IMG/VR virus record: IMGVR_UViG_3300032334_001259
Coordinates: 1 to 64,000 of that record
Length of the DNA stretch: 64,000 nt
Direction: 5' to 3' (one strand)
The notes under the pieces were generated by a model. The model saw nothing but the letters and a program-made list of their open reading frames with translations, ran no database searches and was not told where the DNA came from. Shown here one piece after another: positions 670-58,941 of the stretch. Position numbers and translations under genes: made by a program. The stretch's first letter is position 1. The number at the start of each line of letters is the position of its first letter.

Positions 670-674
670 AAGAA

Positions 675-16636: not shown

Positions 16637-17569
16637 TTAGGATACACTTTTGCTTTTTGTTTTGCCACCTGCTTGTCTTTTACGTCTGCCAGCACAATGT
16701 GCTTTCTGGCTAAAACCTTTTGGATGACTGCAATTAATACTTTTCTTATATTTTTTAGTCCATGTTTCAATTATTTTCTGCATGGATTTTTTAACTTTAT
16801 ACTTTTTACCATCAACAATGAAGTAATCTAAACCTTTTTCACGTGCAGTTCTCAAAGCACCACTAAAGGCATTACCTTCACTTAAACTTAAATCATTATC
16901 AACTGCTTGTAGATGTGCGTCATTTAGTTTGTCAAGATCACCTTCATTACGAAGCAACTTAAATGTAAGGTTTTCAACACCAAATTCGCCTTCACGTTCT
17001 AATCCACTTTGGCGAAGTTTTTTAATACGTTCTTTTAAACGTTTAATAGTAGCACGGTCACCGCTTTCTACCGCTTGGTCTATTTCAGCATGTAGATGTT
17101 CAAATTTGTCTTGAATGTTTGTTGTATCTGGATTAGCTACAATTGTTTTAGGAAACTTAATCCAGTTATTATTATAAATGCTGTAAATTCCATTAGATAT
17201 ATGCTTTTCATCACTGCGTTGAACATATACTTCTACGGCATGTCCATAAATGCTTATATCATGTTGGTCGTTAAATGCACCTTTTTTAGCCATAAACAAT
17301 TGATCAAGGTCTTCTTCACATGGACCATTTACGTCTGCAACAAGATGTAAATCTATATCACTGTCTGCATTATAATTATAACTTGCATTACTACCACTTA
17401 TTGTAATATCAGTTAATTGTAAATTGGGAATGTTTATAAAATCAACAAATGCTTTGGCAATCTTAAACAATGCAAGACGGACTTCTGGTTTAAGGCGATT
17501 GTTTTCCCATAAATCAAGATTCAACTTGTCATGAAATTTTGTAAGTTGTTCTAAGTCACCAATGCGCAT
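16637..17569 (-). CDS. Pol-beta superfamily nucleotidyltransferase with C-terminal micro-domains
   Basis: GS...DIDL signature (ISGSNASYNYNADSDIDLH), third acid in VEVYV; TAAATA 4 nt before ATG. Confidence 0.75.
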   Translation of the reverse strand: MRIGDLEQLTKFHDKLNLDLWENNRLKPEVRLALFKIAKAFVDFINIPNLQLTDITISGSNASYNYNADSDIDLHLVADVNGPCEEDLDQLFMAKKGAFNDQHDISIYGHAVEVYVQRSDEKHISNGIYSIYNNNWIKFPKTIVANPDTTNIQDKFEHLHAEIDQAVESGDRATIKRLKERIKKLRQSGLEREGEFGVENLTFKLLRNEGDLDKLNDAHLQAVDNDLSLSEGNAFSGALRTAREKGLDYFIVDGKKYKVKKSMQKIIETWTKKYKKSINCSHPKGFSQKAHCAGRRKRQAGGKTKSKSVS

Positions 17570-18006: not shown

Positions 18007-18927
18007 TTAAACTCTCTTACCACGACCCAATTCAGCAGTTCCGCCAGCGGCACTATCAGCAGTGTCCAAATCGCCACCATCACGTGGAGGCATTGGTGCT
18101 GCATCAATATCACTTGCTGGTTCAGCAGTAGGAGCAGGTGCTCCACCTAAATCACCAACTGGTGCGGCACCCATTGGTTGTGCGCCATAAACACCACGTG
18201 CTGCATTATCAAGTGTGTCACGTGCGGTGTTTGCACTATCAAGCAATCCTTGTAGAACTTGCTTGGTTGAATCATTAAATGAATTAGCTTGTTCCATGCC
18301 AATTTCATCCTTCATTGCACTTACAAGTGCTGGAAGTTGTTCGTTTTGCATAGTGCTGATCTTTTCAACAATATCTTGGACTGTATCAGCAAGGTCACGT
18401 GCAGCCATAGTAACACGAGCCTGTTCAATTTCACCTTCTGTTAATGCTGGTGGCAGAACAATACTTTCGTTCTTTGCCATCTTTGTAGCAGTGGCATACA
18501 TAACTTCCTTACCACGCTTACCATAACGCTTTTCAAAATCACCACCACGCTTTTTAAGTGACTTAACAAAGTGTTCTTTCTTCTTTGTTTCGCCTGGTGT
18601 CAACTCACGTTCGTTGAGTTGGGTTGTGCAATATTCATTAATTGCGATCATCTTTTCTGCGAGTGCTTTGCGACCTGCTGCCATTTCATTCTTCCATGTT
18701 TCAAGGACTTTAGTTACCATAACAGCTTCCATATATTTTGGATTACGTTCTGCATGATGCACTTGTGAACTTTTACGAATTGTGTTAATTGTGCTTTGAA
18801 CAGTTGAAAGCATTTGGTTAACACTGCCTTCTGTTAAACTGTCAAGATTAAGTTGCCACTTGTAAACTTTCTCTAATTGCTTATTAAGTTCTACGGCAGA
18901 AAAATTATTAAATTCTTTAACAAACAT
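18007..18927 (-). CDS. putative prohead core/scaffold-like protein
   Basis: MFVKEF start, helical coiled segments bounded by xxE sites, TAAATA upstream. Confidence 0.5.
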   Translation of the reverse strand: MFVKEFNNFSAVELNKQLEKVYKWQLNLDSLTEGSVNQMLSTVQSTINTIRKSSQVHHAERNPKYMEAVMVTKVLETWKNEMAAGRKALAEKMIAINEYCTTQLNERELTPGETKKKEHFVKSLKKRGGDFEKRYGKRGKEVMYATATKMAKNESIVLPPALTEGEIEQARVTMAARDLADTVQDIVEKISTMQNEQLPALVSAMKDEIGMEQANSFNDSTKQVLQGLLDSANTARDTLDNAARGVYGAQPMGAAPVGDLGGAPAPTAEPASDIDAAPMPPRDGGDLDTADSAAGGTAELGRGKRV

Positions 18928-22763: not shown

Positions 22764-22767
22764 GTTT

Positions 22768-23565
22768 TTAACAATTTTTAAGTTTTTTAATAGCATTTCC
22801 AACTGTGGTATAAAAATCTTTATTATACAAAAATTCAGTTTTAGATATTTGGCTTAATTTATTATTTGCTTTTTCAATAATTTCATCTCTATACAATAAA
22901 AAATTTTCATTAGATATTGATTTGGGATTTATAATTTCTAAATTTTTAGGAGCAAAAAGCAAGTGTAATCTTTTTTTTCTTGATGCATTAAATGCACTAT
23001 GCAACACACCCGTATTTAATTTATATAATTTTTTAGTATCATTCATCACATAAGCAGCATTACCTTCTATAAAAAAACAATCTGGAATAGTGGTAATAAT
23101 TGGTAAATGATAGGCTACAAAACTTGAATCAATATGAAAATCATACATTGTATGAGGAAACATAGTAGCACATTTGATCATACGAAAATCTATTTTAGTA
23201 ATTGCTTGAATTTCTTCTAATGTTTCTTTTATATATTGAAATTTAGTATCATCTAATATGGAAATAAAACTATCAGTATTTTTTTCATAATCAATATATT
23301 GGGTTTCATTAAAATTTTCTAAACGCTGAACTAATTCTACGACTGTCATCAATTCATCATGAATTACATCATCCAAGTCTCTTACTGGACCTTCTAATTG
23401 TTTTTTTAAAGATAAAGCAGTATCGTGTGTTTTTAAATTTATTTTTTTAGTAGATGTATATTTTTTAACTTCTTCAAGTAGTACAACAATTTGATTATGG
23501 AATTTTGTCCAATTTATATCAGAGTCTTTTAAATCAATAAAATTAGGTAATTCTGGAATGGTCAT
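22768..23565 (-). CDS. AspH-like 2OG-Fe(II) oxygenase domain protein
   Basis: HID...HLPI...LNTGVLHSAFN...RLHL pattern. Confidence 0.65.
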   Translation of the reverse strand: MTIPELPNFIDLKDSDINWTKFHNQIVVLLEEVKKYTSTKKINLKTHDTALSLKKQLEGPVRDLDDVIHDELMTVVELVQRLENFNETQYIDYEKNTDSFISILDDTKFQYIKETLEEIQAITKIDFRMIKCATMFPHTMYDFHIDSSFVAYHLPIITTIPDCFFIEGNAAYVMNDTKKLYKLNTGVLHSAFNASRKKRLHLLFAPKNLEIINPKSISNENFLLYRDEIIEKANNKLSQISKTEFLYNKDFYTTVGNAIKKLKNC

Positions 23566-23639
23566 TGTTTTTTATTTAAGATATTTTTTAAATGATAAAT
23601 TATTATATTATTGGCACATTTAGGCATAAAGGGCAATCA

Positions 23640-25340: not shown

Positions 25341-26730
25341 GATTGTTTAACATTTGTCGTAGCGCACTGCTGTTTACATCAGCCTGTATTTTACCAGGTT
25401 GATCTTCTACCACTGCTTCTGTTGATGGCTTAACATTACTGCCACCCTTGATGCTTGCAAAGATACTACTGCTTTGTTTCTTAAATTGTTGATAATCTGG
25501 ATCTTCTGCCAAATCACGAATACGCAAACTATCAATATCAAATTCAAGTTCAATCTTCTGTCCAACACCACTACTACTACGAGTCTTCATAAGTTGTAGT
25601 TGATACTTGCCATGTTCACGCATACTACGACTTGTAAAGATACCAAACAAATTATCCGCAGTGTTAATCTTACTGATACCACCACTGATATGACTGTGGT
25701 CAAATTCAACTTCTTCTACCGATGCACGGTTTAACTGTGAAGCAGTTACAAGAAGTATGTCTAATTCTTTTGCAAAGTTACGAATTTCTTCACTGACATA
25801 CTTGTCTTTAACGAACAGATCGCTTGGACTTACTTTTGCACTTACTGGCATAAGAAGATCAAGGTAATCAATCATAACAAAGTCTACACGACGACCTGTG
25901 CGGATTTGAAGTTCTTTAATATAAGCACGAACGTCATTGATATTGCTTTGTGCTGGCATATATTTGATTTGTAATCTGCCACTTTTCTTACCAAGCATCT
26001 TAACTTTAACTTCAATATCTTCAATACTCTTAAAGATATCTCGTGACGGTGTATTGGTAAGCATACCATCAATACGCATGGCAGTAAGTTCTTCACTTAA
26101 TTCAAGTGTAATGTATACGCCATTAAGACCAGCCAATATCCAATTACATGCAATATTCTGCATGAACAATGATTTACCACTACCAGAACCACCAGCAAAG
26201 ATATTCAACTCACCACGGTTAAATCCACCAAATAACTTCTTATCAAGTGTAGTCCAACCACTACTTGTTTGACCATTATTGTCTTTAATTTTATTCAATC
26301 GTGCAATAGGATCAAGGAAATAATCAGTTCCAAGGTCTTTGGTTAAACTTATTTGTACTGCATCTTTAATAATTTTTTCAACAGGATCAAAGTCACCCTT
26401 CTCAAGCATATCTGCGGCTTTAAGAATTGCACGTTCAAGTTCTTTTTGTTTAGTAAAACCTTCAAATTCTTCCAAGAACCAACTTGTATGGTCGTCGGTC
26501 ATACCAGGTATTGGTTGGAAAGTATTGCTGGTGGCAGCATTAATTTGTTCTACTAATGGCATAATAGTATGCTTGTCACAATGTTCTTTAATGAACCTTG
26601 CAGCACTTTGTAAACTACGGTCAAAGTTGTTTGGATTGAAAATGTTTTGGACACGCACATAGCTTTGTGGATCACTTAACATCATTTCAATGAATAGTTT
26701 TTGAACTTGGGTATCATAAGATTTAGACAT
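25327..26730 (-). CDS. replicative DnaB-family helicase (T4 gp41-like)
   Basis: GGSGSGKS Walker A, ITLELSE, IDYLDL, TASQLNR, MKTR. Confidence 0.93.
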   Translation of the reverse strand: MSKSYDTQVQKLFIEMMLSDPQSYVRVQNIFNPNNFDRSLQSAARFIKEHCDKHTIMPLVEQINAATSNTFQPIPGMTDDHTSWFLEEFEGFTKQKELERAILKAADMLEKGDFDPVEKIIKDAVQISLTKDLGTDYFLDPIARLNKIKDNNGQTSSGWTTLDKKLFGGFNRGELNIFAGGSGSGKSLFMQNIACNWILAGLNGVYITLELSEELTAMRIDGMLTNTPSRDIFKSIEDIEVKVKMLGKKSGRLQIKYMPAQSNINDVRAYIKELQIRTGRRVDFVMIDYLDLLMPVSAKVSPSDLFVKDKYVSEEIRNFAKELDILLVTASQLNRASVEEVEFDHSHISGGISKINTADNLFGIFTSRSMREHGKYQLQLMKTRSSSGVGQKIELEFDIDSLRIRDLAEDPDYQQFKKQSSSIFASIKGGSNVKPSTEAVVEDQPGKIQADVNSSALRQMLNNLKQK

Positions 26731-26811
26731 AACACTATTGTATCATAAAAACTTTAAATTTTCTATTAGTTTTTTATTTAAACCGCACAATAGTAGTAGG
26801 TAAATATTACG

Positions 26812-27987
26812 ATGATTACATCTGTTGAAGGCGCAGTTTCGTATAATAATAAATTATCTTTTTTGATTGATTGGGAAATTACCTTAAAATGTAATTTGGA
26901 CTGTGGATATTGTGACAAAGGTATTTACGGTGGACATGAAAACAGTATTCCTCATCCAAATTTAGAAAAATGTTTAAAAACTTTAGATTTTTTATATGAA
27001 TATGTTGACATTTATATGCAAGCAAAGAAAAATTTACAAAGTGCCGTTTTGAATGTATATGGTGGAGAAAGTTTATATCATCCTGACATTGTTACAATTT
27101 TAAAACAAAGCAAAGAAAAACATCAAAAATATAATTGGAATTTGACAATTACTACAACTACAAATTTAATTTTAAGTCAAAAAATATTAAATCAGATATT
27201 AAATTATATAGATGAATTTACGTGTAGCTTTCATTCTGAAAACACAGACAAACAATTAGAAATTTTTAAAGAAAATTTGTTATTTTTAAAAAGCAATAAT
27301 AAAAATTTTAAAGTTGTAATTCTAATGAATCCTAAAAAATGGGAATATTGTTTAGATATGATTTCTTTTTGTCAAGAAAACAATATGAGATTTTTAATAA
27401 GACAGCTTGATCAACCATTAGCCAAAGCTCCCGATAATTATAATTCAGAACTTAAAAAAAAAGAAACTTGGTATTATAATGTTTATCTTGATCGTCCAGA
27501 AAATCATGAACCCAAATACACATATTCTCAAGAACAAATATCTTGGTTTGAAGAGGAATATAATGGTAGAAATAAAAACACTGTAACTTCTATTGACAAA
27601 AATAATAATTTAAATGAACAAGGTAGATGCTGCTGTGGTGGTCGTTTATTATCTACAAATCAAAATTATAAAAATAAAGTAAGTTTTGTTAATAACAATT
27701 TTTTTGATTGGTATTGCTCAGTAAATTATTTTTTTGTTTTTGTGAAACAAGTTACAGAAGAAATATTTGTTAATAAAGATTGTATGATGAATTTTTCTGG
27801 AAATATCGGTCCTATTGGTAATTTAAAAAATTATAATGAACTTTTAAATTTTACAAAAACAAATTTAGAAAATAAAACATTACCTGTAATAAAATGTGCC
27901 AAACAACTTTGCAGATGTGGTTTATGTGCACCAAAAGCAAAAGATAAAGAAATATACTTAAAAATTATGAACAAATATATAAATTAA
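26812..27987 (+). CDS. radical SAM protein
   Basis: CNLDCGYC, YGGE, TTN, SFH, C-terminal Cys cluster; very AT-rich. Confidence 0.85.
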   Translation: MITSVEGAVSYNNKLSFLIDWEITLKCNLDCGYCDKGIYGGHENSIPHPNLEKCLKTLDFLYEYVDIYMQAKKNLQSAVLNVYGGESLYHPDIVTILKQSKEKHQKYNWNLTITTTTNLILSQKILNQILNYIDEFTCSFHSENTDKQLEIFKENLLFLKSNNKNFKVVILMNPKKWEYCLDMISFCQENNMRFLIRQLDQPLAKAPDNYNSELKKKETWYYNVYLDRPENHEPKYTYSQEQISWFEEEYNGRNKNTVTSIDKNNNLNEQGRCCCGGRLLSTNQNYKNKVSFVNNNFFDWYCSVNYFFVFVKQVTEEIFVNKDCMMNFSGNIGPIGNLKNYNELLNFTKTNLENKTLPVIKCAKQLCRCGLCAPKAKDKEIYLKIMNKYIN

Positions 27988-28982
27988 AACCATCTTTTTG
28001 TTTGTAATTTTATTTTTAAGCTAGATTGTTCAACACTACTTAAAATGCTTTTCATAGTAAATGTATGTCCATACTTGGCTACCGCATCTGCAGTATCTTT
28101 AATACCACTTTCCCAATCAGGAAATGCCACACTCCAACCATATCTTAGGGCAGCATCAACCATTGCGTGACCAGCTTTATCACGATCAGGGACAACAATA
28201 ATATCACGGTCAAGCGTTTCAATAACATCAGCTTGTATATCATTAATTTCATTACTACAAATTGCAAGTGCACCAATGGCAACTGCATCAAGTAATCCTT
28301 CAACTACAATACAGAACTTTGCGTTCTTGTGTTGTTTATCATATCCCCATATCATGTTGCTTGGATAGTTTGAAAAGTATTTGATCTTTTTCTTACCATC
28401 TTCAAATAACCGTCCACTGAAACCCATGGGCTTATTGTTCCAAGTAAATGGAACTAACACACGGTTACGCAATGCCGCATCATTAGTCCAATAAAACTCA
28501 TGCAACTTATCGCCAAAACCACGAGTATCAAGATAATTGATAGCATTTTCAAGACTGTTATAATCTGCTTCATTGATATATCCATCATTTAACCAATTTG
28601 TAATTGGACGACCAGGACAAGGATCACGTGGTTCATAGGTAGGTAACTCACGTGGTTCAACTACAACTGGCTTGGTGGTCTCTTGGCTGATAGCAAATAA
28701 TGCAAGACGACCTATAAGGTCTTCACCCATACCAAGCCAGTTCATCCAACGCCGCATTTTATAACTTAAACGACGACCAGGTTGCCAACTACAAGTGTAA
28801 TGACAATTAAAACAATGATAATTGATACCGCCTTCTGGTGTTTGATGAACGCCACCACGACCACGAGTATCGGCTTCATGTCCTAAATGCTGACAGCATG
28901 GTGCGTTAAAGCTAATCCATCCACTTGGAGTAGCTTTCTTTTTCCATGGCAAGTGTGCCAGTAGTTGGTTGGTAATTTCCAT
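27984..28982 (-). CDS. DNA primase (T4 gp61-like)
   Basis: Zn-ribbon (PCC, HCFNC), TOPRIM VEGLLDA and PDRD, KD. Confidence 0.9.
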   Translation of the reverse strand: MEITNQLLAHLPWKKKATPSGWISFNAPCCQHLGHEADTRGRGGVHQTPEGGINYHCFNCHYTCSWQPGRRLSYKMRRWMNWLGMGEDLIGRLALFAISQETTKPVVVEPRELPTYEPRDPCPGRPITNWLNDGYINEADYNSLENAINYLDTRGFGDKLHEFYWTNDAALRNRVLVPFTWNNKPMGFSGRLFEDGKKKIKYFSNYPSNMIWGYDKQHKNAKFCIVVEGLLDAVAIGALAICSNEINDIQADVIETLDRDIIVVPDRDKAGHAMVDAALRYGWSVAFPDWESGIKDTADAVAKYGHTFTMKSILSSVEQSSLKIKLQTKRWF

Positions 28983-33767: not shown

Positions 33768-34389
33768 ATACTTCTTTTTCTGCTTCCAATGCTATTGCAG
33801 CTATCTTTCTTATCACAATACCATTATCTTTTGCAATTAATAAATGTGTTAAATCCTTATATGAATTAATATCTTTGCTATTAATTAAAACGATATCAAT
33901 TCCTTTTTGAATAATTTTTTTGTATATTTTTTCGTCGTACTCTTGTGTAATTGCCTTACCATTTGAAAATATGTTATATTCAAGATCACGTGGTTTCATA
34001 TACATAAAAAGTTGATGTAATGAATGTCCATCATACACAATATACCACGTTCTGGCATTGGAATCCCATTTTGCACCTAACTTTTTTACCCTATCTTTAT
34101 GTTCAAATGGCACATCAAGAATTATTTTATAGTTTTCTTTCATATAGCTATAACTTAAAGTTAATTCATGATATACACATTCAATATAAATGTCATATTT
34201 TTTAATATAAAAATCACATATAATATTTTGATTAGGATATTTTACTTCATATTCATATGGAAGACCACTTGGTAGCAAAAATTTATTAACAAAATCAGCC
34301 TCAAATTTACTGCGATATTTTTTACCGTCATTTGCATACGTAGGAATACCAAAGATAGGTTTTCTTATTTTTGTTTCAAGATTAACCAA
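33751..34389 (-). CDS. PD-(D/E)xK endonuclease with inserted DUF5710-like domain
   Basis: YRSKFE...YEYE...CDFYI...IYIE; VPFEHKDRVKKLGAKWD...W. Confidence 0.6.
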   Translation of the reverse strand: MVNLETKIRKPIFGIPTYANDGKKYRSKFEADFVNKFLLPSGLPYEYEVKYPNQNIICDFYIKKYDIYIECVYHELTLSYSYMKENYKIILDVPFEHKDRVKKLGAKWDSNARTWYIVYDGHSLHQLFMYMKPRDLEYNIFSNGKAITQEYDEKIYKKIIQKGIDIVLINSKDINSYKDLTHLLIAKDNGIVIRKIAAIALEAEKEVFDEQT

Positions 34390-34615
34390 GGATTATTCCT
34401 CTCCATTCACCTTTTTCAGTTGGCTGAAATATTGCAGAAATACTGTCATCATGCTTGAATTCTTTTATTTCTACACTTGCATAATACAGTGAGCGCAACT
34501 GATCTGCCACATCTTTCAACGTTGGATTAGTCTCGGTGGCTTTAAGAATATCCATCCACTCAATATATTCTTCTGTATAATACCGTTTTGGGGGTGGTGC
34601 GTTTCCAATGCTCAT
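34382..34615 (-). CDS. hypothetical protein
   Basis: 77-aa ORF with a leaderless sigma70 promoter. Confidence 0.6.
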   Translation of the reverse strand: MSIGNAPPPKRYYTEEYIEWMDILKATETNPTLKDVADQLRSLYYASVEIKEFKHDDSISAIFQPTEKGEWRGIILG

Positions 34616-34621
34616 AATATT

Positions 34622-34650
34622 ATCTTATCATACATTATTGGTTTTGTCAA
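34622..34650 (-). promoter_or_regulatory. sigma70 promoter TTGACA-17-TAAGAT (leaderless)
   Basis: -10 box ends 6 nt before ATG 34615; TG extension. Confidence 0.7.
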
Positions 34651-35369
34651 TAGTCACGATATCCATATTTTGTAAGGTCAATATCATATCCAAAACAATT
34701 TACAATGTCTGGTAGCCAAGTTTTTTCCAATGCTTCTTCATACAAAACAGAATTGAAATTTGGTTGTATTTTATATAATTCATCATATTTTTTGTTTATA
34801 AAAATGTCTTCATAACTTAAATTTTTAAAAACTGTAGAATAATCTTTGTTTACATCATCATAAACGTGAAAATCTAATTTTTCACAATTTTCTAAATCAT
34901 AAATCAAAGATTGATAGCGATTGTAATCATTTATTTCTAAATTTTTCTCTAAACAATAAAAATCTGCATGGTATTCAATTTTAGATGATAAAAAATTATC
35001 TTTTGTTTTAGACATAAGATAACTTCCTAATTTTTTTTTGAAAAAAAGTGGTCTACTCGTATAGGCTTTTACAAATCCTTCAATGGAAGCAGTACGATAG
35101 TATTTTTTTTCTATTGATATTTTTATAATTTTGCAATTATATTTTTCTAGTAATTCTTTTTCAATTCCGTATAATCTATGACCTGGTATAATAAAAAATT
35201 CTTTTTCAAGTTTTTTTTCTACATTATATCCTTCCCAATTTTTTAAATTTATTTTATGTTTTTTAGATCTAGCATGACCACCATCTGTAATTAATTTTTT
35301 AAAATTTAAAAAATTACATAAAAAATCACCCTTGCATCCACCTCTGTAATCTAAAAGATATTTTGTCAT
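34647..35369 (-). CDS. hypothetical AT-rich protein (possible sulfotransferase-like P-loop)
   Basis: YRGGCKGDFL N-terminal motif, LSYEDI. Confidence 0.4.
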   Translation of the reverse strand: MTKYLLDYRGGCKGDFLCNFLNFKKLITDGGHARSKKHKINLKNWEGYNVEKKLEKEFFIIPGHRLYGIEKELLEKYNCKIIKISIEKKYYRTASIEGFVKAYTSRPLFFKKKLGSYLMSKTKDNFLSSKIEYHADFYCLEKNLEINDYNRYQSLIYDLENCEKLDFHVYDDVNKDYSTVFKNLSYEDIFINKKYDELYKIQPNFNSVLYEEALEKTWLPDIVNCFGYDIDLTKYGYRDY

Positions 35370-35866
35370 ACGATATTTTGGATATCAATGGTTTCACTTG
35401 CACGGCTAATTTCTTTAACAAAGTATGCACAGATTGGCTTTGGACCATCACTAATTGGAATACAAAGTAGCTGACCATTTTTTAGTTTAGGAAAATACCA
35501 ACGCACATCTTGATATACATCTTCAATTTCTATTGGTAAAAAGTCAGCACGGAATGAACTTAGCGGATTAAATGTAAATGCTTCAAATCCACGGTCATTT
35601 AATTTTGTAAGTGGTAGTGCTTCTAAATCACCTATCTCTGCTTCACCAATAAGTATACGCCAATTATATGGCATCATTATACGATGTTGTCCTATTTTAA
35701 GAACCAATGCTGGATCATTAAAACTTTCTAAAAATACCAGTGGTAAGAAATAATAATCTGCTTCTGGTGGGTTACTGTTATCTAAAACGCAAAATCGTAA
35801 ATCATCAACTTGTTCTGGTAAATTATTCATTTCAAATACGGTATTGTCAACTGTTAATATTCTCAC
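35366..35866 (-). CDS. conserved phage hypothetical protein
   Basis: PLVFLESF and WYFPKLK; downstream of uvsW. Confidence 0.65.
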   Translation of the reverse strand: MRILTVDNTVFEMNNLPEQVDDLRFCVLDNSNPPEADYYFLPLVFLESFNDPALVLKIGQHRIMMPYNWRILIGEAEIGDLEALPLTKLNDRGFEAFTFNPLSSFRADFLPIEIEDVYQDVRWYFPKLKNGQLLCIPISDGPKPICAYFVKEISRASETIDIQNIV

Positions 35867-36633
35867 TGTCTTTCCTTAACAAAATTATAATATAGTTCAG
35901 CAATGGCAACCTGACCATCAGGATGCGTATGATAACCAGGGTCTACCCCTGTAAGTGGATGGCTATTACAAAAAGCACCCAATGCAAATGTAGTAGGTGC
36001 AAAATACTTTTGTAAAAATGGTTGTGGGAAATCTGCCGCCCAACCTTTACCATGAATATATGTATTCCAACCATTAAACAAAAAGGGTATGTTTAAGTAA
36101 TCTAATTTCCATAAACCACTATATAATACCCAATTATCTACTTGACGTTTCCAATGTGCATCATAAAGAAATGCAGCATAACCTTCCATTGCCATGCGTG
36201 TATGCTTGTCTACTTTTGTAATACGATAATTGTGGTCATAGTTTTCTATAACACTAAACATTGTTTCAGCAATCATGCGATAAGGATGTGCGTCACCATA
36301 ATTAAAATTCTTTAATCCATCTTCCCAAAGATAACCATTACGATTATCATGGTGTGCACTGTGGTTTGGACTACCATCTTCTATCTTGATAAATTTCTCA
36401 ACTGGAAACTCTAAACGGTCTTCTGTTGTGCTTGCGACGAATACCCAATCTGCTTTTTCTTTTATTGCTTCATCTATTTGTAATCGTATTACATTATTAC
36501 CAATACCTTGTCGTGCATATGTTATTAATTCTGCACCAAGTTTGTTAGCAAGTATTTCACTCCAATGTGTTCCTTTGTATTCAGGCAAATTACTAACAGC
36601 ACTGAAACTACAACCACACACTGCTATCTTCAT
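35863..36633 (-). CDS. SGNH/GDSL-like protein
   Basis: IAVCGCSFS, ARQGIGN, YHTHPDG. Confidence 0.55.
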   Translation of the reverse strand: MKIAVCGCSFSAVSNLPEYKGTHWSEILANKLGAELITYARQGIGNNVIRLQIDEAIKEKADWVFVASTTEDRLEFPVEKFIKIEDGSPNHSAHHDNRNGYLWEDGLKNFNYGDAHPYRMIAETMFSVIENYDHNYRITKVDKHTRMAMEGYAAFLYDAHWKRQVDNWVLYSGLWKLDYLNIPFLFNGWNTYIHGKGWAADFPQPFLQKYFAPTTFALGAFCNSHPLTGVDPGYHTHPDGQVAIAELYYNFVKERQ

Positions 36634-41100: not shown

Positions 41101-41174
41101 TGGTGGAGAATATCAGAGTCGAACTGATGAATCCGCCTTGCAAAGGCGGCGGTTTTCCACTAGCCTAATTCCCC
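41101..41174 (-). tRNA. tRNA-Ala(UGC), CCA encoded
   Basis: GGGGAAT/ATTCTCC stem with G3:U70; anticodon arm CCGCC-TTTGCAA-GGCGG; T arm ATCAG-TTCGACT-CTGAT; TTGACA promoter at 41213. Confidence 0.95.
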
Positions 41175-49665: not shown

Positions 49666-50685
49666 TTAACCCCTCGAAGCCAATTTGTGATCTGTTTCAC
49701 ACATATCGTTTACAAGGTCTTGTAGGGTAAATTCTGGTTGCCAACCAAGAACTTCACGAACCTTTGTTGCATCACCTTGGATGTTTACAACATCAACTGG
49801 ACGATAGAACTCTGGGTTAACCTTAATCATAACTTGTCCAGTTGCCTTGTTACGTGCAACTTCGTCAACGCCTTCACCTTCCCATACAAGTTCAATGTTG
49901 AAATAATTTGCTGTAAGATTACAAAAATCACGGATGCTGCTTTGAATACCAGTAGCAACTACATAATCATCTGGCTTGTCGTGTTGCAACATCATCCACA
50001 TACCACGAACATAATCCTTGGCATGACCCCAATCACGAAGACTGTTCATATTACCAAGTTCAAGAACCTTCTGCTTACCTAATACCATGTTAGCAAATGC
50101 TTTTGTAATCTTACGAGTTACAAAGAGTTCACCACGGCGTGGACTTTCATGGTTGAATAGAAGACCATTACAACCAAAAATCTTATAACTTTCACGATAG
50201 TTTACAGTAATCCAATAAGCATATAGTTTAGCAGCACTATATGGTGAGCCAGGATAGAATGGTGTATCTTCTTTTTGTGGATTATACTTTTGAATACCAA
50301 ACATTTCACTGGTTGATGCTTGATAGAACTTAACATCATCAATCATCTTGAGACTACGGATACTATCAAGGATACGCAATGGTCCAAGAGCATTTGTATC
50401 ACCAGTAAGTTCTGGCATTTCAAAACTTACCTTAACATGGCTTTGTGCCGCAAGGTTATAAATTTCTGTTGGACGAACATTGTCAATAAGGTTACGGATG
50501 CTATTTGCATCACTTAAGTCACCATTATGAAACTTGACTCGATCCTTTACATCTTGAATATTTGGGTGGTCAAAGTTTGCGCTACGGCGAATAAGACCAT
50601 GGACTTCGTAGCCCTTGTCAAGTAGCAATTCTGCCAAATAGCTACCATCTTGACCTGCGATGCCCGTAATAAGTGCTCTTTTCAT
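49666..50685 (-). CDS. gmd: GDP-mannose 4,6-dehydratase
   Basis: ITGIAGQDGSYL, NLAAQSHV, QASTSE, SPYSAAK, FNHESPRRGE.FVTRK, RDWGHA. Confidence 0.95.
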   Translation of the reverse strand: MKRALITGIAGQDGSYLAELLLDKGYEVHGLIRRSANFDHPNIQDVKDRVKFHNGDLSDANSIRNLIDNVRPTEIYNLAAQSHVKVSFEMPELTGDTNALGPLRILDSIRSLKMIDDVKFYQASTSEMFGIQKYNPQKEDTPFYPGSPYSAAKLYAYWITVNYRESYKIFGCNGLLFNHESPRRGELFVTRKITKAFANMVLGKQKVLELGNMNSLRDWGHAKDYVRGMWMMLQHDKPDDYVVATGIQSSIRDFCNLTANYFNIELVWEGEGVDEVARNKATGQVMIKVNPEFYRPVDVVNIQGDATKVREVLGWQPEFTLQDLVNDMCETDHKLASRG

Positions 50686-53678: not shown

Positions 53679-53900
53679 TTATTTTACAGCGGCATAAACA
53701 ATTACTTGTGTGCCATTTATAATTGGACCAGTTAATGTAATTTGATAATTGCCTTCTGGCGTAGGTCCAATGTCAACAGCATGATTAGGAAAGTTTGGAA
53801 TTACTTCACTTATAACTTTCCAACTCATGCTGCCGCTATCTACATATCGCTGTTGATCTGCCCAATTTTGTAACCAAGCAAGATCATACGTATCAGCCAT
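53679..53900 (-). CDS. hypothetical protein
   Basis: 73-aa coupled ORF. Confidence 0.55.
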   Translation of the reverse strand: MADTYDLAWLQNWADQQRYVDSGSMSWKVISEVIPNFPNHAVDIGPTPEGNYQITLTGPIINGTQVIVYAAVK

Positions 53901-54123
53901 TATGGACTGTAGCCTTTATTTTTTCTAATGTTAGTATAGCATCATAAAGATGTTCTATGATATTGCCCGCAAATCCGCCAGTGTTTACACCCTGTTGCAT
54001 AAGATTTTTTGCCTCTGCACGAAGTTCACCAAGGAGATTAATCACATCATCTATGCTTGCATTACTTGTCAATCTTGTTGTTTCTTGTAATCCAGCAAGT
54101 CTTTTAATATCTTCTACACTCAT
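53893..54123 (-). CDS. small putative internal head protein
   Basis: ATGA-coupled start MSVEDIKRLAGLQE. Confidence 0.6.
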   Translation of the reverse strand: MSVEDIKRLAGLQETTRLTSNASIDDVINLLGELRAEAKNLMQQGVNTGGFAGNIIEHLYDAILTLEKIKATVHNG

Positions 54124-57100
54124 TTTATAACAATTCCTGCTACTGCTTGCATCCAACGAAGATCAGCTTTTACGCTTTCTTCTGTCTTTTCTTTCTTGTC
54201 CTTTACTGCCTTCTTGAATGGTTCTTTTTTGTCACCATCTTTGTCAACATCAAGGAAATCTGGCTTTGCTTTTGCTTCGTCAACCTTTGCTTCGTCAGTA
54301 TATTCAACATCATTATGCTTCATATAATCACGTGCTGTGTCAAGATAGTCAAGTGCCTTTGTAATCTTTGCTTGAACCCATTCAGGAAGATTTTCATCAT
54401 CTTGTAGGATTGCTTCAAGTTCTTTTGCCGCATCTGCCGCACCAGCAAGGTCATTCTTTGCCATACGGCCTTCTTGATCATATTCTGCCTTATCATCATC
54501 ACTTGGCTCACCATCTTGTGGAATGTTGTCATCTTCTTCTTGTGCGTAGATATAGTTTTCCATCAAAGGCAAACCCGCCAATTTACGCATTTCCATTACT
54601 TCTTTACTCATTTTGGTTTCCTTTGTTTCTTTCATATCACGTTCTGGATAATAATGTCCACCAGCATCATATGCACCGTGTGGATTGGTTGAACCGTCAG
54701 CATCATACCAGTCTTCTTTATCATCATAGCGTTTGTCATCGGCGTCTGAATCTTCATGTTCTGGTTTGTCTGCTGAACCACCTTCTTTTACTTGATAAGT
54801 TTTGCCATCTACTTCAAACTCTTTCTTACCAGCAGCTTTAGCAGCAGCTAATGCACCACTGAACTCATTGCCTTCATTTGGTTCTTCATTTACGTGTTCA
54901 CTGCTTTCCATAGCTTTTTTAATCCAAGCACGTGCTTCATCTTCTGTTTTAGCATGAAAGACATCACGACTTGGATTACGCTTTAGAACAATTTCGTAAC
55001 CACCTTTAGCATCTGGTTTAATCATATATGGAACTGGCTTTGAATCAGTCATACTTGCGGCACCAGCACCAAGACCAGCGGCAAGTGCACCAGCTGCTAT
55101 TGTTTTACCAATGCCTTCATCAGTTTCTTCTTCTTTCATGTACTTGTCTTTAATCTTGCCAAGTTCTTCTTGACTTGCACCTTCACGACCTGCTTTTGCA
55201 AGCGCAGCCATACCATCTTTGCCATATTTCTTTTTACCAGTGTAATATTGAAGTCCACTTTCTTCAACTTCATCTTCTTCAATACTTTCTGGATTGTATG
55301 CTGGTCCCTTAATGTTAGGCATTAATTCTTTATCAGAACTATGTTGTGCGCCTTTGACAAAACGATCCACTTGATTTGCGATTGCATCTTTTTTATGATC
55401 TAAATCCCAGTACATTCTATATAAATTAGCCATTCGTTGAGCATCATGCGGATTCTTTTCTTTAAGCCGTGCATAAATTTGATTAGCATCAGCATCTTCT
55501 TTGCCAGTCCACCAATAATCCAAACTTCCATCTTTTTGTTGATCATATTGATAACCAAAATTTTTCTGAACTATATCTAATATTTTTTTATGTATTGCAT
55601 CACGACTTGTTTGTATATTGGCAATTTTTTCACGAGCAACTTTTGCTGATTTATACAAAAGTTGTGGTGAAAGTTCATCAATTTGTTCTTCACTGACAGC
55701 ATCTTCACGCATACCAAGTGTTTGCATAACTTGGTTTACCATAGCACTTACATCACTGGTGCCAATTTCTTGTGCACCAACATGATCTTGCGCTACACTA
55801 TGAATAGCATCTAATACTTTATCAAGACCATGCGCACGAAGCATCTTGTTTGCGGCACCACTGCTCATAAGACGATGACTGATTGCATCAGTGATATCTT
55901 CTACACTGGCTTCTTCACCAATACTCATGATTTCTTCTGCAAATGCTTCACTTTCAGTCTTCTTACCCTTAATCTTTTCTGGCTTACGTGTTGTATCTTG
56001 ACGATATTCACGTTCCAACTTTGGATTTTGCTTAATAAGATTAAGTTCTTTAAGATACTTTTGTGCAAGAAGAATAGCTAATTTCTTGTCACTTGTATAT
56101 TCTTTGTCATCAGCTTTCTGTCCAAATGCTTCACCTTCACTGCTCATAAGGTCACCCATAAGTGCTGCAAAGTTTGCAACATCATCGCTATCAGGTGCTA
56201 CAAGACGGTTAGCAATATCACCAAGAATAGCAACCGCCATTGCCTTGCTATCTGTATAGTTACGGCTTGTCATCAACTTGTCAAGACCAGCATCTGCTTT
56301 CAAAAGTAATTTAAATTTTGGATTAAGAATCTTGTTCTTAACACTATCACTGACTTCATCAAGTTTGTTAAGTGTATTTTCACGAAGTTTTTTATAAGCA
56401 CCAGCAGCACTTGCAAGATAATTGTCAAGGTTTTCATTGTAAGTTTGTTGTGTGAACCATGCCTTTACTTCTGTAACATCATCAACTTGTTCACCCAAAA
56501 ACTCTGCAAGTGATTGTAAACTCTCATCAAATCTACGGCTATTATTGCTCAAACGATTAAGATGACGCTTAAGATTTTCTTTTACAGTTTGTGCGGCACG
56601 AATAACATTGCTTGCTTCTGCTGCTTCAAATGTGCGGCTACGTGTAGCACTTGCAAAGCGTCCCAGATTACGCATTTCATTTACTGCACGACTAATAATT
56701 TGTCCATTAGAATCATAAGGATTGCCACCACGTGATACGTGATTTGCCATTGCCTTTGCACCACTTACACTTTTAAATGGAAGTAGAAATTTCTCACCAC
56801 TTTCATTTACAAGGAAGATACGATCAACTTTTAACAAACGATTGTTTGGATTTTCCAACATGCGTTCATTATGAACAACATGAATACGAACATTGTTAAG
56901 GCTACCTTCACTCACCTTGCCTTTGCGTTGCCATAATACACGGCTTTCTTCTAATGATTCTTTCATTTTCTTTTTCTCTGGGTTGGTTTTAGCTAAAAAT
57001 TCATAATCTCTGCGACTTAATACATCTTTGCTTATGTCACGAACGTCAAAATTTAACATATGTGACTTTGCATAACGACGAAGTTCACGTAAGAAACGAT

Positions 57101-57362
57101 ACCAATAATCTTTGTCTTCTGGTAACATACGTTCAGTGATAGCATTATCAAAGAACACTTTCATGCTGTTACCATCAATAAGACTGCATGTAACTTCACC
57201 ATAATCACGTTCGCTTTGCTTATCAACATAACGGAAATTAAAAAAGCGTGAGGCTTCTGGATCAATGGTTGTTACACCATTTTCATCACCAAGTCTGATT
57301 TTTGGGAATCTATTTCTTAATTTAAAAAATAGATCGTTACTTGCATTACTTAAATCGGCCAT
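54120..57362 (-). CDS. large modular head-associated protein (conserved-looking N-half plus a string of Glu-delimited micro-domains)
   Basis: Directly downstream of terminase, TAAATA 5 nt before ATG, charged modules separated by xxE sites. Confidence 0.6.
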   Translation of the reverse strand: MADLSNASNDLFFKLRNRFPKIRLGDENGVTTIDPEASRFFNFRYVDKQSERDYGEVTCSLIDGNSMKVFFDNAITERMLPEDKDYWYRFLRELRRYAKSHMLNFDVRDISKDVLSRRDYEFLAKTNPEKKKMKESLEESRVLWQRKGKVSEGSLNNVRIHVVHNERMLENPNNRLLKVDRIFLVNESGEKFLLPFKSVSGAKAMANHVSRGGNPYDSNGQIISRAVNEMRNLGRFASATRSRTFEAAEASNVIRAAQTVKENLKRHLNRLSNNSRRFDESLQSLAEFLGEQVDDVTEVKAWFTQQTYNENLDNYLASAAGAYKKLRENTLNKLDEVSDSVKNKILNPKFKLLLKADAGLDKLMTSRNYTDSKAMAVAILGDIANRLVAPDSDDVANFAALMGDLMSSEGEAFGQKADDKEYTSDKKLAILLAQKYLKELNLIKQNPKLEREYRQDTTRKPEKIKGKKTESEAFAEEIMSIGEEASVEDITDAISHRLMSSGAANKMLRAHGLDKVLDAIHSVAQDHVGAQEIGTSDVSAMVNQVMQTLGMREDAVSEEQIDELSPQLLYKSAKVAREKIANIQTSRDAIHKKILDIVQKNFGYQYDQQKDGSLDYWWTGKEDADANQIYARLKEKNPHDAQRMANLYRMYWDLDHKKDAIANQVDRFVKGAQHSSDKELMPNIKGPAYNPESIEEDEVEESGLQYYTGKKKYGKDGMAALAKAGREGASQEELGKIKDKYMKEEETDEGIGKTIAAGALAAGLGAGAASMTDSKPVPYMIKPDAKGGYEIVLKRNPSRDVFHAKTEDEARAWIKKAMESSEHVNEEPNEGNEFSGALAAAKAAGKKEFEVDGKTYQVKEGGSADKPEHEDSDADDKRYDDKEDWYDADGSTNPHGAYDAGGHYYPERDMKETKETKMSKEVMEMRKLAGLPLMENYIYAQEEDDNIPQDGEPSDDDKAEYDQEGRMAKNDLAGAADAAKELEAILQDDENLPEWVQAKITKALDYLDTARDYMKHNDVEYTDEAKVDEAKAKPDFLDVDKDGDKKEPFKKAVKDKKEKTEESVKADLRWMQAVAGIVIK

Positions 57363-57378: not shown

Positions 57379-58941
57379 CTATAACATAATAAAAGGCATT
57401 GGTGGAATGATATCTGCTGAATCCATGCTCAATCCATCACTGATTCTGGCATCATACATACGTAGATGTAATATCATTCTAACCGCTAATAATGTAGCCA
57501 TAACAAGGTCATCTGTTTCACCAATCTTTGCTTGATAGCTTACACCATGCGCAACGAATGTTTTTAATTCACTGACCAAAATCTTACTACAAATTTTAAT
57601 TTTATTTGTTTCTACCCACAACTTAAACTTACTACATGCGGCAATTTTGCTCTTTGGTGTAGTATTAAATCCTTTACGGTATCTACGTCCACCGCCACCA
57701 GCAGGTTCACTTAAGAAACTACCTGGTATATTTTCTTCACCAAAGTCAGCAACTGCATTAAGTGCAGCTTCGCCAATAGTATTATTTTCTATACTATAAT
57801 AGATGTTGCCAGGATCATTTGTAATTTCTTTAATATATTTGCAGATTTCTGCCATAATAGCAACTTGCTTTTGTATAATAGTTAAGTTATGTTGCCATTC
57901 AGCTACTTGACGCATGCTTGTTGCATCAAAAACTTGAATAGCGGCAGGATCACCACCTGTACCAAGACTTGGATCAAGTGCTATAATATAAACATGGTCA
58001 CGTTGTGGCTTTTCATACCAACGAACTTGACCTTGTTTTTCTATCGGTTCTACACCTTTTAAATCTGTCAAAATACTAGGAGCAATAAGAGTTTCGTCAT
58101 AAATGACAAATTCGCAATTATGTTCACGGCGGAAGCGATCTACACCAACACTTGCCATTTCACGTTCTGCCCAATCTTTACCACGTTCTGGATGACGATC
58201 CCAAGTAGCAAGATATGGACTAAATCCGTTACGACCAATAGGTGTTTCATTGCCAAAGCTATCAAATTTCTTATTTGCTTCTTTCCAAATATCAGCAAAT
58301 TGATCTTCATCACTGTTCGGTGTTGATGTAATAATTGCTTTACCACCAGTTGATAGGGTAGGACTAATAGATGTCCAAAATTCATGAGCAATAGTAGGAC
58401 GAACGAACGCCAACTCGTCACAGTATAGAAGTGAGATAGACATACCACGACCAGTAGTTTCTGTGGTGGTAGCACTTACAATGCGGCTACCATTGTCAAA
58501 TCCAAGACTACCTTTGTTATAATCAATAACGCCAGCACGTATATGGTCTGGGCAGTTTTCATAAGCATAACGAATACGCTGCATAATTTCTTGTGCGCCA
58601 ACATATTTGTTACTTGCAACCAGAATCGTGCTATCTGGAATAAACATTGCATACCAAAGTAAATAACCTGCCGCAATGGTAGTTTTACCCATCTGGCGAC
58701 CTAACATATTGATACTAAAGCGATTTTCGTGATAGTTTTTAAGTAATTCTTCCTGATAATCAAAAGGAACAAACTTTAATCTACCATGTGTAGGATGCTG
58801 AATGTAAAAGAAATTCTTAATAAAATATTCAGGTCCAGTTACGGGATCTGCACACAAACTAAACTCTATAAGTTCTTTCTGTGTTAGTTGCATACGTATA
58901 TGCGGTTTACGTATAAGGTTATTTTCTGGTTGTTTTGCCAT
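57379..58941 (-). CDS. terminase large subunit (gp17-like)
   Basis: YQ Q-motif, RQMGKTT Walker A, LLYCDE Walker B, TSTPN, ALDPSLG, DDLVMA. Confidence 0.95.
   Translation of the reverse strand: MAKQPENNLIRKPHIRMQLTQKELIEFSLCADPVTGPEYFIKNFFYIQHPTHGRLKFVPFDYQEELLKNYHENRFSINMLGRQMGKTTIAAGYLLWYAMFIPDSTILVASNKYVGAQEIMQRIRYAYENCPDHIRAGVIDYNKGSLGFDNGSRIVSATTTETTGRGMSISLLYCDELAFVRPTIAHEFWTSISPTLSTGGKAIITSTPNSDEDQFADIWKEANKKFDSFGNETPIGRNGFSPYLATWDRHPERGKDWAEREMASVGVDRFRREHNCEFVIYDETLIAPSILTDLKGVEPIEKQGQVRWYEKPQRDHVYIIALDPSLGTGGDPAAIQVFDATSMRQVAEWQHNLTIIQKQVAIMAEICKYIKEITNDPGNIYYSIENNTIGEAALNAVADFGEENIPGSFLSEPAGGGGRRYRKGFNTTPKSKIAACSKFKLWVETNKIKICSKILVSELKTFVAHGVSYQAKIGETDDLVMATLLAVRMILHLRMYDARISDGLSMDSADIIPPMPFIML

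What the first reader, a model, noticed from the sequence alone, without database searches (positions are those of the whole stretch)
54120..55950. Glu-delimited micro-domain polyprotein downstream of the terminase
Seen: the C-terminal half of the 1080-aa protein is a string of 25-60 aa blocks, each bounded by an xxE-type site (QIDE, EVEE, ETDE, VNEE, QVKE, LMEN, KVDE, TEE). Examples are SGLQYYTGKKKYGKDGMAALAKAGREG, GNEFSGALAAAKAAGKKEFEVDGKTY, YDQEGRMAK...LPEWVQAKITKA.DYL and KPDFLDVDKDGDKKEP. Similar Glu-bounded inserts occur in 18007..18927 (ERELTPGE...YATATKMAKNE) and at the NTase tail. Known: T4-type prohead proteases cut after Glu. Inference: these are polyproteins that release a cocktail of small peptides in the head, and the cassettes are gained or lost independently.
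Basis: partly seen in the sequence, partly recalled or inferred. Interest (0 to 1): 0.72.

Follow-up and report, generated by a model that had tools for sequence, protein, structure and literature searches.

The report
Shuffled mini-domain tail on jumbo-phage virion protein
The C-terminal 600 residues of a 1080-residue jumbo-phage protein are a real, rapidly reshuffled string of small independent domains joined by Glu-rich linkers and ending in the scaffold protein's own tail motif; cutting into head peptides by the phage's T4-type protease is plausible but unproven.

Summary
ORF 54120..57362 (-) follows the large terminase. It has a conserved N-terminal domain (aa 1-483) and a tail of about eleven 15-130 aa modules.

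Shown:
- 117 homologues carry 48 module architectures, with permutations, duplications and losses.
- A 94%-identical relative differs by one clean 414-nt cassette.
- Modules b6 and b9 occur in thousands of other phage proteins. b9 also occurs as free-standing 76-89 aa proteins.
- AlphaFold gives beads on a string.
- The genome encodes a T4-type head module, including a Peptidase_S77 prohead protease.
- An [ILMV]-G-E site is nearly invariant exactly where conservation stops.
- [LIVM]-x-E sites are 3.7 times denser at module borders than inside modules.
- Nearly all tails end in a motif (..RLAGL..) otherwise found at the scaffold protein's C-terminus.

Inferred: the tail enters the prohead core and is cut after Glu.

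Caveats:
- There are no proteomic data.
- The linkers are Glu-rich anyway.
- GAAGA(A) codons also serve as recombination microhomology.
- The same modules sit on enzymes that lack the targeting motif.

Verdict: module shuffling is well supported. The polyprotein reading is partly supported (about 0.4).

The parts
54120..57362 (-). Whole gene, 1080 aa: conserved N-domain plus mosaic tail
   Evidence: ORF list. 302 homologues, nearly all aligned only over the first 45-54% of the query.
55914..57362 (-). N-domain, aa 1-483, conserved in all homologues. The PA5oct relative gp278 (no tail) is a virion protein detected by mass spectrometry. Fold not recognised.
   Evidence: Fold searches without a significant match. 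Relatives in BFVD are jumbo or uncultured phage proteins.
55914..55922 (-). I-G-E (aa 481-483): nearly invariant [ILMV]-G-E at the exact point where family conservation ends. Best candidate maturation site.
   Evidence: about 96 of 101 rows. G482 and E483 are at least 90% conserved in alignment A5.
55686..55910 (-). Module b1 (aa 485-559), helical; present in 23 of 117 homologues
55278..55691 (-). Cassette b2 (aa 558-695), a helical hairpin pair. It is a single in-frame 414-nt insertion relative to a 94.4%-identical gene, flanked by GAAGA microhomology. Found elsewhere only in one 100%-identical contig.
55125..55259 (-). Module b3 (aa 702-746; SGLQYYTGKKKYGKDGMAALAKAG...), basic, two helices
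55035..55106 (-). Module b4 (aa 753-776), a Gly/Ala-rich hydrophobic stretch; in most homologues that have it, b5 follows directly
54906..55034 (-). Module b5 (aa 777-819), three strands plus a helix, pLDDT about 80
54783..54875 (-). Module b6 (aa 830-860; EGNEFSGAL..FEVDGKTYxVKE), a helix plus beta hairpin. At least 349 copies in IMG/VR; 55 of the best 80 lie in unrelated proteins.
54639..54779 (-). Module b7 (aa 862-908), acidic and rich in His/Asp/Tyr, predicted disordered
54555..54629 (-). Module b8 (aa 912-936; ..EVMEMRKLAGLPLME), an internal copy of the scaffold-type C-terminal motif
54318..54488 (-). Module b9 (aa 959-1015; EYDQEG..NLPEWVQAKITKA.DYL), a helical hairpin. 6373 protein clusters in 1.84 billion representatives. 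Also occurs as stand-alone 76-89 aa proteins and in T4-like cyanophages.
54186..54278 (-). Module b10 (aa 1029-1059; KPDFLDVDKDGDKKEP), a DxDxDG loop with only faint EF-hand/dockerin likeness; duplicated in some homologues
54123..54167 (-). Module b11 (aa 1066-1080; DLRWMQAVAGIVIK), the C-terminal LAG-type motif present at the end of at least 101 of 120 homologue tails
53893..54123 (-). Small gene (76 aa from the ATG at 54123, which overlaps the stop of the big gene as ATGA). It begins MSVEDIKRLAGL. The synteny and the N-terminal motif are conserved in related loci.
57379..58941 (-). Large terminase subunit immediately upstream
16790..16882 (-). Second copy of module b6, in the tail of the nucleotidyltransferase-like ORF 16637..17569. 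That ORF has no LAG motif.

Best explanation
SHOWN
- The gene encodes a conserved 483-aa domain. Its PA5oct relative is a virion component.
- This domain is fused to a mosaic array of small, autonomously folding phage mini-domains. They are joined by disordered, Glu-rich linkers.
- The array is reshuffled quickly by in-frame gain, loss, duplication and permutation of cassettes. At least one event used GAAGA microhomology in the Glu codons.
- The modules belong to a large, unannotated repertoire shared by aquatic jumbo phages and T4-like cyanophages.
- The one feature kept in almost every tail is a terminal amphipathic motif (hydrophobic-x-x-hydrophobic-x-[RK]-L-A-G-[LI]). The same motif ends the scaffold protein of this whole phage group.

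INFERRED
- The scaffold-like motif recruits the protein into the prohead core.
- The phage's gp21-type protease (Peptidase_S77) then cuts after Glu at hydrophobic-x-E sites.
- The first cut would be at the invariant I-G-E483. Further cuts would fall in the linkers.
- This would free the N-domain and about 8-12 fragments of 30-80 aa. Some are basic (b3, b10) and some very acidic (b7, b9).
- The fragments would either stay with the DNA as internal peptides or leave the head as scaffold fragments do.
For: Modularity:
- Conservation drops at aa 483.
- 48 architectures, with permuted order.
- At least 5-17 changes per module on the N-domain tree.
- One clean 414-nt indel between genes 94.4% identical.
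- b6: at least 349 loci in IMG/VR; of the best 80, 55 lie outside the family, including cytidylyltransferase-like, DUF3008 and LysM proteins.
- b9: 6373 clusters, protein lengths 76-2323 aa. Stand-alone proteins exist.
- Beads-on-a-string model.

Protease context:
- The genome holds a T4-order head module: portal, a 74-aa protein, an acidic 285-aa protein, an S77 protease, the scaffold and the major capsid protein.
- The capsid protein keeps a conserved Y-L-x-E|[SN]-A at the expected maturation site in 68 relatives.
- T4 gp21 cuts after L/I-X-E and chops gp22, gp67 and gp68 into many fragments (PMC9026906).

Sites:
- [ILMV]-G-E is nearly invariant at the domain/tail border.
- [LIVM]xE density is 0.055 per residue at borders against 0.015 inside modules. 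[LIVM]xD and [SAG]xE are flat.
- Observed/expected is 1.87 at borders against 0.83 in module interiors.
- Genome-wide, [LIVM]xE density ranks the scaffold 1st of 287, the protease 4th, the acidic core protein 11th and this protein 29th, at twice the median.

Targeting motif:
- Strict RLAGL-type hits in the genome occur only in the scaffold C-terminus, module b8 and the small gene just downstream.
- The scaffold end N-[IV]-x-[ED]-[MI]-[KR]-R-L-A-G-L is invariant in 68 relatives. It is also present in PA5oct, Atu_ph07 and 121Q.
- The motif is in 111 of 120 tails, in no N-domain, and in 2.3% of shuffled tails.
Against: - There is no mass-spectrometric or other direct evidence of cleavage or of head location.
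- The N-domain fold is unrecognised. The PA5oct data say 'virion', not 'head' (PMC7318152).
- In the query alone the sites are not enriched in linkers beyond the Glu enrichment.
- The conserved N-domain also has observed/expected of 1.58.
- Homologous sequences are not independent counts.
- The V-x-E that ends b6 is conserved in every host protein, so it may be structural.
- The same modules sit on enzymes in this genome that lack the LAG motif.
- Known gp21-type substrates carry N-terminal propeptides or targeting sequences. This protein has none (PMC10052503, PMC9026906).
- The complex prediction of capsid protein with b8 gave no answer.
Confidence: 0.4

Rival explanations
1. Uncleaved flexible array. 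The protein stays whole in the virion, or is ejected whole like a polyvalent protein. The tail is a tether of small binding domains (basic, acidic, Ca-loop-like). The Glu-rich linkers are only entropic spacers. Their GAAGAA codons also favour in-frame recombination.
For: - Glu enrichment alone explains the linker signal in the query.
- The indel is flanked by GAAGA microhomology.
- Junction DNA is similar between linkers (families D4 and D8).
- The modules occur on enzymes not expected to be cut.
- A BFVD structural neighbour is annotated as carrying a large polyvalent protein-associated domain.
- Polyvalent proteins can be packaged unprocessed (PMC5512222).
Against: - It does not explain the invariant hydrophobic-G-E exactly at the border.
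- It does not explain the contrast between E and D at P1.
- It does not explain the shared scaffold-type motif.
- It does not explain why [LIVM]xE density singles out the head-core proteins together with this one.
Confidence: 0.33
2. Processed, but not cargo. The tail acts as an assembly-only, scaffold-like extension. It is cut off at I-G-E483, degraded and expelled like gp22 fragments. The 'peptide cocktail' then has no function after assembly.
For: - The tail ends like the scaffold.
- In T4, core-protein fragments mostly leave the head (PMC9026906).
- PA5oct's homologue does without any tail.
Against: - The modules are more conserved than the N-domain. b6 has 79% mean column identity across homologues whose N-domains are 45-50% identical.
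- The modules also exist as stand-alone genes.
- Both points argue that the modules have functions of their own.
Confidence: 0.17
3. Selfish or neutral in-frame cassettes. The modules spread as hitch-hiking DNA and are merely tolerated in a permissive disordered tail, with no role for the host protein.
For: - Promiscuous distribution.
- Orphan cassette b2.
- Frequent gain and loss.
Against: - There are no DNA-level repeats or end signatures beyond 5-6 nt.
- Copies within one genome are only 55-58% identical at the protein level.
- Module sequences are under strong purifying selection.
- The terminal motif is retained.
Confidence: 0.07

Closest known systems
T4 prohead core proteins and internal proteins (gp22, gp67, gp68, IPI-III, Alt), cut by gp21
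   Same: - The phage encodes a gp21-family (Peptidase_S77) protease in a T4-order head module.
- Candidate sites fit L/I(V)-x-E.
- Multi-site cutting into small acidic and basic fragments would parallel gp22, gp67 and gp68 and the internal peptides.
   Different: - No sequence homology to any of them.
- The gene sits next to the terminase, not in the head module.
- The conserved part is N-terminal and the proposed cleaved part is C-terminal.
- There is no N-terminal capsid-targeting sequence. The candidate targeting motif is C-terminal and copies the scaffold's end.
- The fragments are recognisable, widely shared folded modules.
phiKZ / 201phi2-1 / SPN3US ejection and inner-body proteins, cut by gp175 / gp245
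   Same: Jumbo-phage head proteins with redundant Glu-specific sites, and families of modular head proteins.
   Different: - The motif there is A/S/G-x-E. [SAG]xE is not enriched here.
- All mapped SPN3US propeptides are N-terminal (PMC10052503).
- It is a different phage lineage. This phage groups with PA5oct, Rak2 and Atu_ph07 by scaffold, portal and capsid protein.
Polyvalent proteins of phages and conjugative elements (Iyer et al. 2017, PMC5512222)
   Same: - Many domains in one polypeptide, with variable architectures.
- Predicted packaging into the capsid and delivery, with possible processing.
- One BFVD structural neighbour is annotated with a large polyvalent protein-associated domain.
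   Different: - None of the enzymatic or LPD Pfam domains is detected.
- The modules are 15-130 aa mini-domains rather than enzymes.
- There is no built-in peptidase.
Viral polyproteins (picornavirus or retrovirus type)
   Same: The concept of one translation product cut in trans into several functional units.
   Different: Not known for tailed-phage cargo. Here the units are shuffled between close relatives, and cleavage is unproven.

Membership tests
Substrates of T4-type prohead protease (gp21 family) | The phage encodes a Peptidase_S77 prohead protease | tested here: met
   PF03420 match, E 1.9e-26, at genome 146086..146511 (-), between the acidic core protein and the scaffold
Substrates of T4-type prohead protease (gp21 family) | Accessible L/I-x-E sites at the processed positions | tested here: inconclusive
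   - [ILMV]-G-E is nearly invariant at aa 481-483.
- Border enrichment is 3.7-fold at family level.
- It does not exceed the Glu richness in the query alone.
Substrates of T4-type prohead protease (gp21 family) | The protein is present in proheads and is found cleaved in virions | not testable with these tools
   Only indirect evidence: the PA5oct homologue of the N-domain is flagged ESI-MS/MS in the record
T4 internal proteins (IP/Alt type) | An N-terminal capsid-targeting sequence of about 10 aa ending in L/I-x-E | tested here: not met
   The N-terminus is part of the conserved folded domain and has no [LIVM]xE in the first 20 residues
phiKZ/SPN3US-type processed head proteins | A/S/G-x-E cleavage motif and an N-terminal propeptide | tested here: not met
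   [SAG]xE density is 0.029 at borders against 0.032 inside modules. The conserved domain is N-terminal.
Polyvalent proteins (Iyer 2017) | 2-15 domains in one polypeptide with variable architectures | tested here: met
   11 modules plus the N-domain; 48 architectures
Polyvalent proteins (Iyer 2017) | Contains the characteristic enzymatic or LPD domains (MPTase, ART, ParB, LPD1-n and others) | tested here: not met
   No Pfam family at E up to 0.01 on the whole protein, and none meaningful at E up to 1 on the parts. There is only a structural neighbour with an LPD annotation.
Scaffold-type C-terminal motif bearers (this phage group) | An amphipathic ..[ED]-[IM]-[KR]-[RK]-L-A-G-[LI].. motif at or near the C-terminus | tested here: met
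   - b8 and b11 in the query.
- 111 of 120 homologue tails.
- Scaffold ends in 68 relatives and in PA5oct, Atu_ph07 and 121Q.
- The function of the motif has not been tested.

The most novel reading that the evidence does not exclude
The tail is a combinatorial cargo system. A scaffold-mimicking C-terminal tag loads a polyprotein into the prohead. The maturation protease then cuts it at hydrophobic-x-E linkers into a strain-specific cocktail of mini-proteins. These are packaged with the DNA and injected, and each is an independent effector or DNA-organising peptide. The Glu-codon linkers would serve both as cleavage sites and as recombination joints, so cargo sets could be reshuffled between co-infecting jumbo phages. 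The same 'tag plus linker' grammar would mark other packaged proteins in aquatic jumbo phages. The LAG motif is in 24 of 55 unrelated module-bearing proteins against 14 of 335 background ORFs.
Probability: 0.2. Interest if true: 0.85.

Novelty: new variant of a known kind. Interest (0 to 1): 0.62.

Why it matters
If the processing model is right, this is a new way for a tailed phage to build and diversify its packaged protein cargo. One gene would carry interchangeable mini-proteins, a packaging tag borrowed from the scaffold, and linkers that double as protease sites and recombination joints.

Even without cleavage, three results stand:
- A large, unannotated repertoire of phage mini-domains. 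b9 has more than 6000 clusters at 50% identity. b6 has hundreds of loci and no match in 50,697 cultured-phage records.
- A conserved C-terminal scaffold motif for the PA5oct/Rak2/Atu_ph07 jumbo-phage group.
- A clean natural example of cassette exchange inside a coding region.

These give concrete targets for domain annotation, for capsid-targeting tags in phage engineering, and for searching viral metaproteomes.

Tried and rejected
- Portal hypothesis for the N-domain: rejected. A separate T4-type portal is encoded at genome 147795..149582.
- Pfam and PHROGs on the whole protein and on parts: nothing useful beyond a weak 'virion structural protein' PHROG and a PHROG of unknown function for b9.
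- Fold searches of the full model and of the N-domain alone (Foldseek PDB, VIA wide): no significant match. The hits to b2 are generic helical hairpins.
- Complex prediction of the capsid protein with b8: 'no answer', so it is not used as evidence.
- DNA repeats inside the tail: only short similarities of 12-35 nt between linker codons, and no transposon-like ends.
- phiKZ-type S/A/G-x-E motif: not enriched.
- Origin of cassette b2: found only in one 100%-identical contig.
It was rebuilt without that row.
Full report
**Where it is**

The window is the first 64 kb of a 338,435-bp virus record with direct terminal repeats. ORF 54120..57362 (-) encodes 1080 aa. It follows the large terminase (57379..58941, Terminase_6N/6C) by 17 nt. 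Two small genes, a gp32-like SSB and a UvsX-like recombinase lie downstream. Pseudomonas jumbo phage PA5oct has the same order: TerL, structural proteins, then UvsX. Its gp278 (496 aa) is 29% identical over aa 11-254 of the query and is flagged ESI-MS/MS as a virion structural protein. The finding's coordinates correspond to aa 471-1080, and every quoted peptide is there.

A search of 5.8 billion proteins gave 302 homologues of 600-1339 aa. Nearly all align only over the first 45-54% of the query. BLAST coverage is complete up to aa 483 and then collapses.

HMMs seeded from the query tail and iterated on the homologues define eleven modules, b1 to b11. These occur in 48 different architectures. 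The differences include:
- presence or absence of modules;
- permutations (b9-b6 against b6...b9; b4-b5-b3 against b3-b4-b5; b7-b6);
- duplications (b10 twice);
- 21 homologues with none of these modules.

On a tree of 117 N-domains, each module needs at least 5-17 changes and the architectures at least 70.

The gene of P0002 is 94.4% identical in DNA to the window's gene. It differs by a single in-frame 414-nt indel (aa 558-695, module b2) flanked by GAAGA microhomology. I found b2 nowhere else except in one 100%-identical contig.

AlphaFold2 on the family alignment predicts folded beads:
- b1, b2, b3 and b9 are helical;
- b5 is three strands plus a helix;
- b6 is a helix plus a hairpin.

Eight of the nine stretches in the tail with pLDDT below 50 lie between modules; the ninth (605-624) is inside b2.

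**The modules live elsewhere**

In the same genome:
- b6 also recurs in genome ORF 232144..232881.
- b9 recurs in the adjacent ORF 232881..233753.

Module b6 in IMG/VR:
- It has at least 349 loci.
- Of the best 80, only 25 are in this protein family.
- The other 55 include cytidylyltransferase-like, DUF3008-containing and LysM-containing proteins.
- The ten of those contigs that I checked are 11-96% complete at 46-356 kb, most of them 11-26% complete at 46-100 kb, so they too are jumbo phages.

Module b9 against 1.84 billion cluster representatives:
- A b9 profile found 6373 proteins at E up to 0.001 and 2218 at E up to 1e-10.
- They are 76-2323 aa long, with the module at any position.
- None of the top 147 has the N-domain.
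- Several are essentially the module alone, at 76-89 aa.
- Atlas neighbours are 100% viral and have no Pfam family.

Among cultured phages, b9 is seen only in T4-like cyanomyoviruses and in Flavobacterium 'immuto' myophages, always as hypothetical proteins. b6 is seen in none. Pfam recognises none of the modules. b10 has only a faint EF-hand/dockerin-like DxDxDG loop.

**Protease context**

The genome carries a T4-ordered head module at 143-150 kb:
- a gp20-type portal (E 4e-108);
- a 74-aa protein;
- a 285-aa very acidic protein;
- a Peptidase_S77 prohead protease (E 1.9e-26);
- a coiled-coil scaffold;
- a gp23-type major capsid protein.

No HK97-type protease was found. The capsid protein keeps [KR]-Y-L-x-E|[SN]-A at the expected maturation point in 68 relatives and in PA5oct. 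This matches the L/I-X-E rule of T4 gp21. That protease also chops gp22, gp67 and gp68 into many fragments (PMC9026906).

**Are the borders cleavage sites?**

Evidence for:
- The last conserved residues of the N-domain are [ILMV]-G-E in about 96 of 101 aligned homologues, including those with entirely different tails. G482 and E483 are at least 90% conserved.
- In 51 non-redundant homologues, [LIVM]xE density is 0.055 per residue within 6 residues of module edges, against 0.015 inside modules.
- [LIVM]xD is flat (0.018 against 0.018), and the phiKZ-type [SAG]xE is not enriched.
- Against composition, observed/expected is 1.87 at borders and 0.83 in interiors.
- A recurrent junction, E-D-A-V-[STN]-E-E, precedes different modules.
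- Across 287 non-overlapping ORFs of the genome, [LIVM]xE density ranks the scaffold first, the protease 4th, the acidic core protein 11th, the b6-bearing ORF 232144..232881 7th and this protein 29th. The value for this protein is 2.87 per 100 aa, against a median of 1.42.

Evidence against, or weakening:
- The counts come from related sequences.
- The N-domain itself has observed/expected of 1.58.
- In the query alone, 10 of 14 tail sites fall in low-pLDDT linkers (p 0.04). Glu itself is enriched there, and hydrophobic P3 adds nothing significant (Fisher p 0.75).
- The V-x-E that ends b6 is conserved in 61 of 72 copies whatever the host protein, so it may be structural.
- Glu codons at junctions also provide recombination microhomology.

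A strict search for [RK]-L-A-G-[LI]-type motifs in all genome ORFs hits only three related places:
- module b8 of this protein;
- the extreme C-terminus of the scaffold;
- the N-terminus of the small gene whose ATG overlaps this gene's stop codon.

The scaffold end N-[IV]-x-[ED]-[MI]-[KR]-R-L-A-G-L is invariant in 68 relatives. It also occurs in PA5oct, Atu_ph07 and, as L-S-G-I, in 121Q.

A relaxed form of the motif is present in 111 of 120 homologue tails, and within 12 residues of the C-terminus in at least 101. It is in no N-domain and in 2.3% of shuffled tails. Even tails that share no other module with the query end this way. The downstream small gene keeps the motif in related loci. The motif is also enriched in unrelated module-bearing proteins: 24 of 55 against 14 of 335 background ORFs.

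I infer, but could not test, that this is the contact by which the scaffold and these proteins join the prohead. A complex prediction with the capsid protein gave no answer.

**Mechanism proposed**

Shown: the modular anatomy, the shuffling, the protease and head-module context, the conserved border site and the shared terminal motif.

Inferred:
1. The tail is carried into the prohead core by its scaffold-like motif.
2. The gp21-type protease cuts at I-G-E483 and in the linkers.
3. The predicted fragments are listed. They include basic b3 (pI 9.5) and b10-b11 (pI 9.3), and acidic b7 (pI 4.3) and b9 (pI about 4.1-4.6).
4. The fragments either remain with the DNA or leave like scaffold debris.

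Differences from known cases:
- T4 targeting sequences and all mapped SPN3US propeptides are N-terminal (PMC9026906, PMC10052503). Here the conserved domain is N-terminal and the variable, possibly processed part is C-terminal.
- The 'polyvalent protein' idea (PMC5512222) fits the multi-domain, capsid-delivered concept. One BFVD structural neighbour carries such an annotation. None of that family's defining domains is detectable.

**What failed or was rejected**

- The N-domain is not the portal. Its fold matches nothing solved.

**Verdict**

The evolutionary half of the interpretation (independent cassettes) is well supported. The biochemical half (a head polyprotein cut after Glu) is plausible, at about 0.4. 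It is supported by several independent but indirect signals and is directly testable. I file the finding as a new variant of known kinds: gp21-type head-core substrates and polyvalent proteins. It has two features that appear undescribed, the shuffled mini-domain repertoire and the scaffold-type terminal motif.

Noticed in passing
window 330-694 (-): ARAGORN calls a phage-encoded tmRNA with tag peptide ANDNAPVEMRLAA. The tag's ending ..VEMRLAA loosely resembles the scaffold/b8 motif ..EM[KR]RLAGL. This may be coincidence.
   Followed up: no
window 41101-41174 (-): tRNA-Ala (TGC), the only tRNA in the window.
   Followed up: no
window 53893-54123 (-): A 76-aa gene whose ATG overlaps the big gene's stop codon (ATGA). 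It begins MSVEDIKRLAGL. The motif and the position are conserved in related loci. It may be a separately encoded partner carrying the same tag.
   Followed up: partly
genome 232144-233753 (-), outside the window: Two adjacent genes carry b6 (245 aa) and b9 (290 aa). The first ranks 7th of 287 in [LIVM]xE density. It ends in a Cys-containing ..WPSAYASGALVKCR.. segment.
   Followed up: partly
window 16637-17569 (-): A nucleotidyltransferase-like protein whose tail holds b6, followed by a Cys/His-rich basic segment (..SINCSHPKGFSQKAHCAG..). Pfam gives only a weak match to a phage repressor family.
   Followed up: partly
window 18007-18927 (-): The segment NERELTPxE..FEKRYGKRG.EVMYATATKMAKNE is strongly conserved in 36 relatives. 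By eye it resembles a segment of the b9-bearing cyanophage S-WAM2 protein (..SIAYATAWKHK..), but no alignment was made. It may be another mini-domain.
   Followed up: partly
L194 838-1347 and 6280-7446 (a relative whose copy of this gene is 94.4% identical in DNA): The close relative has an HNH endonuclease gene upstream of TerL. It also has a 388-aa gene on the opposite strand between the small genes and the SSB; the window has no room for that gene, since its SSB follows the small genes directly. Whether the window has the HNH gene was not checked.
   Followed up: no
window 22001-24000, 26001-28000, 34001-36000: Low-GC stretches (0.28-0.29, against about 0.36 elsewhere), possibly recently acquired islands.
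   Followed up: no
window 49666-50685 (-): A 339-aa ORF that reads like an NAD-dependent sugar-nucleotide dehydratase (GDP-mannose 4,6-dehydratase type). This is judged from the sequence only and was not tested with a family search.
   Followed up: no
P0192 (2323 aa): A very long protein with eight partial b9-like stretches plus Big_1/invasin-type Ig domains. This suggests that b9-like helices also occur in surface-type architectures.
   Followed up: no
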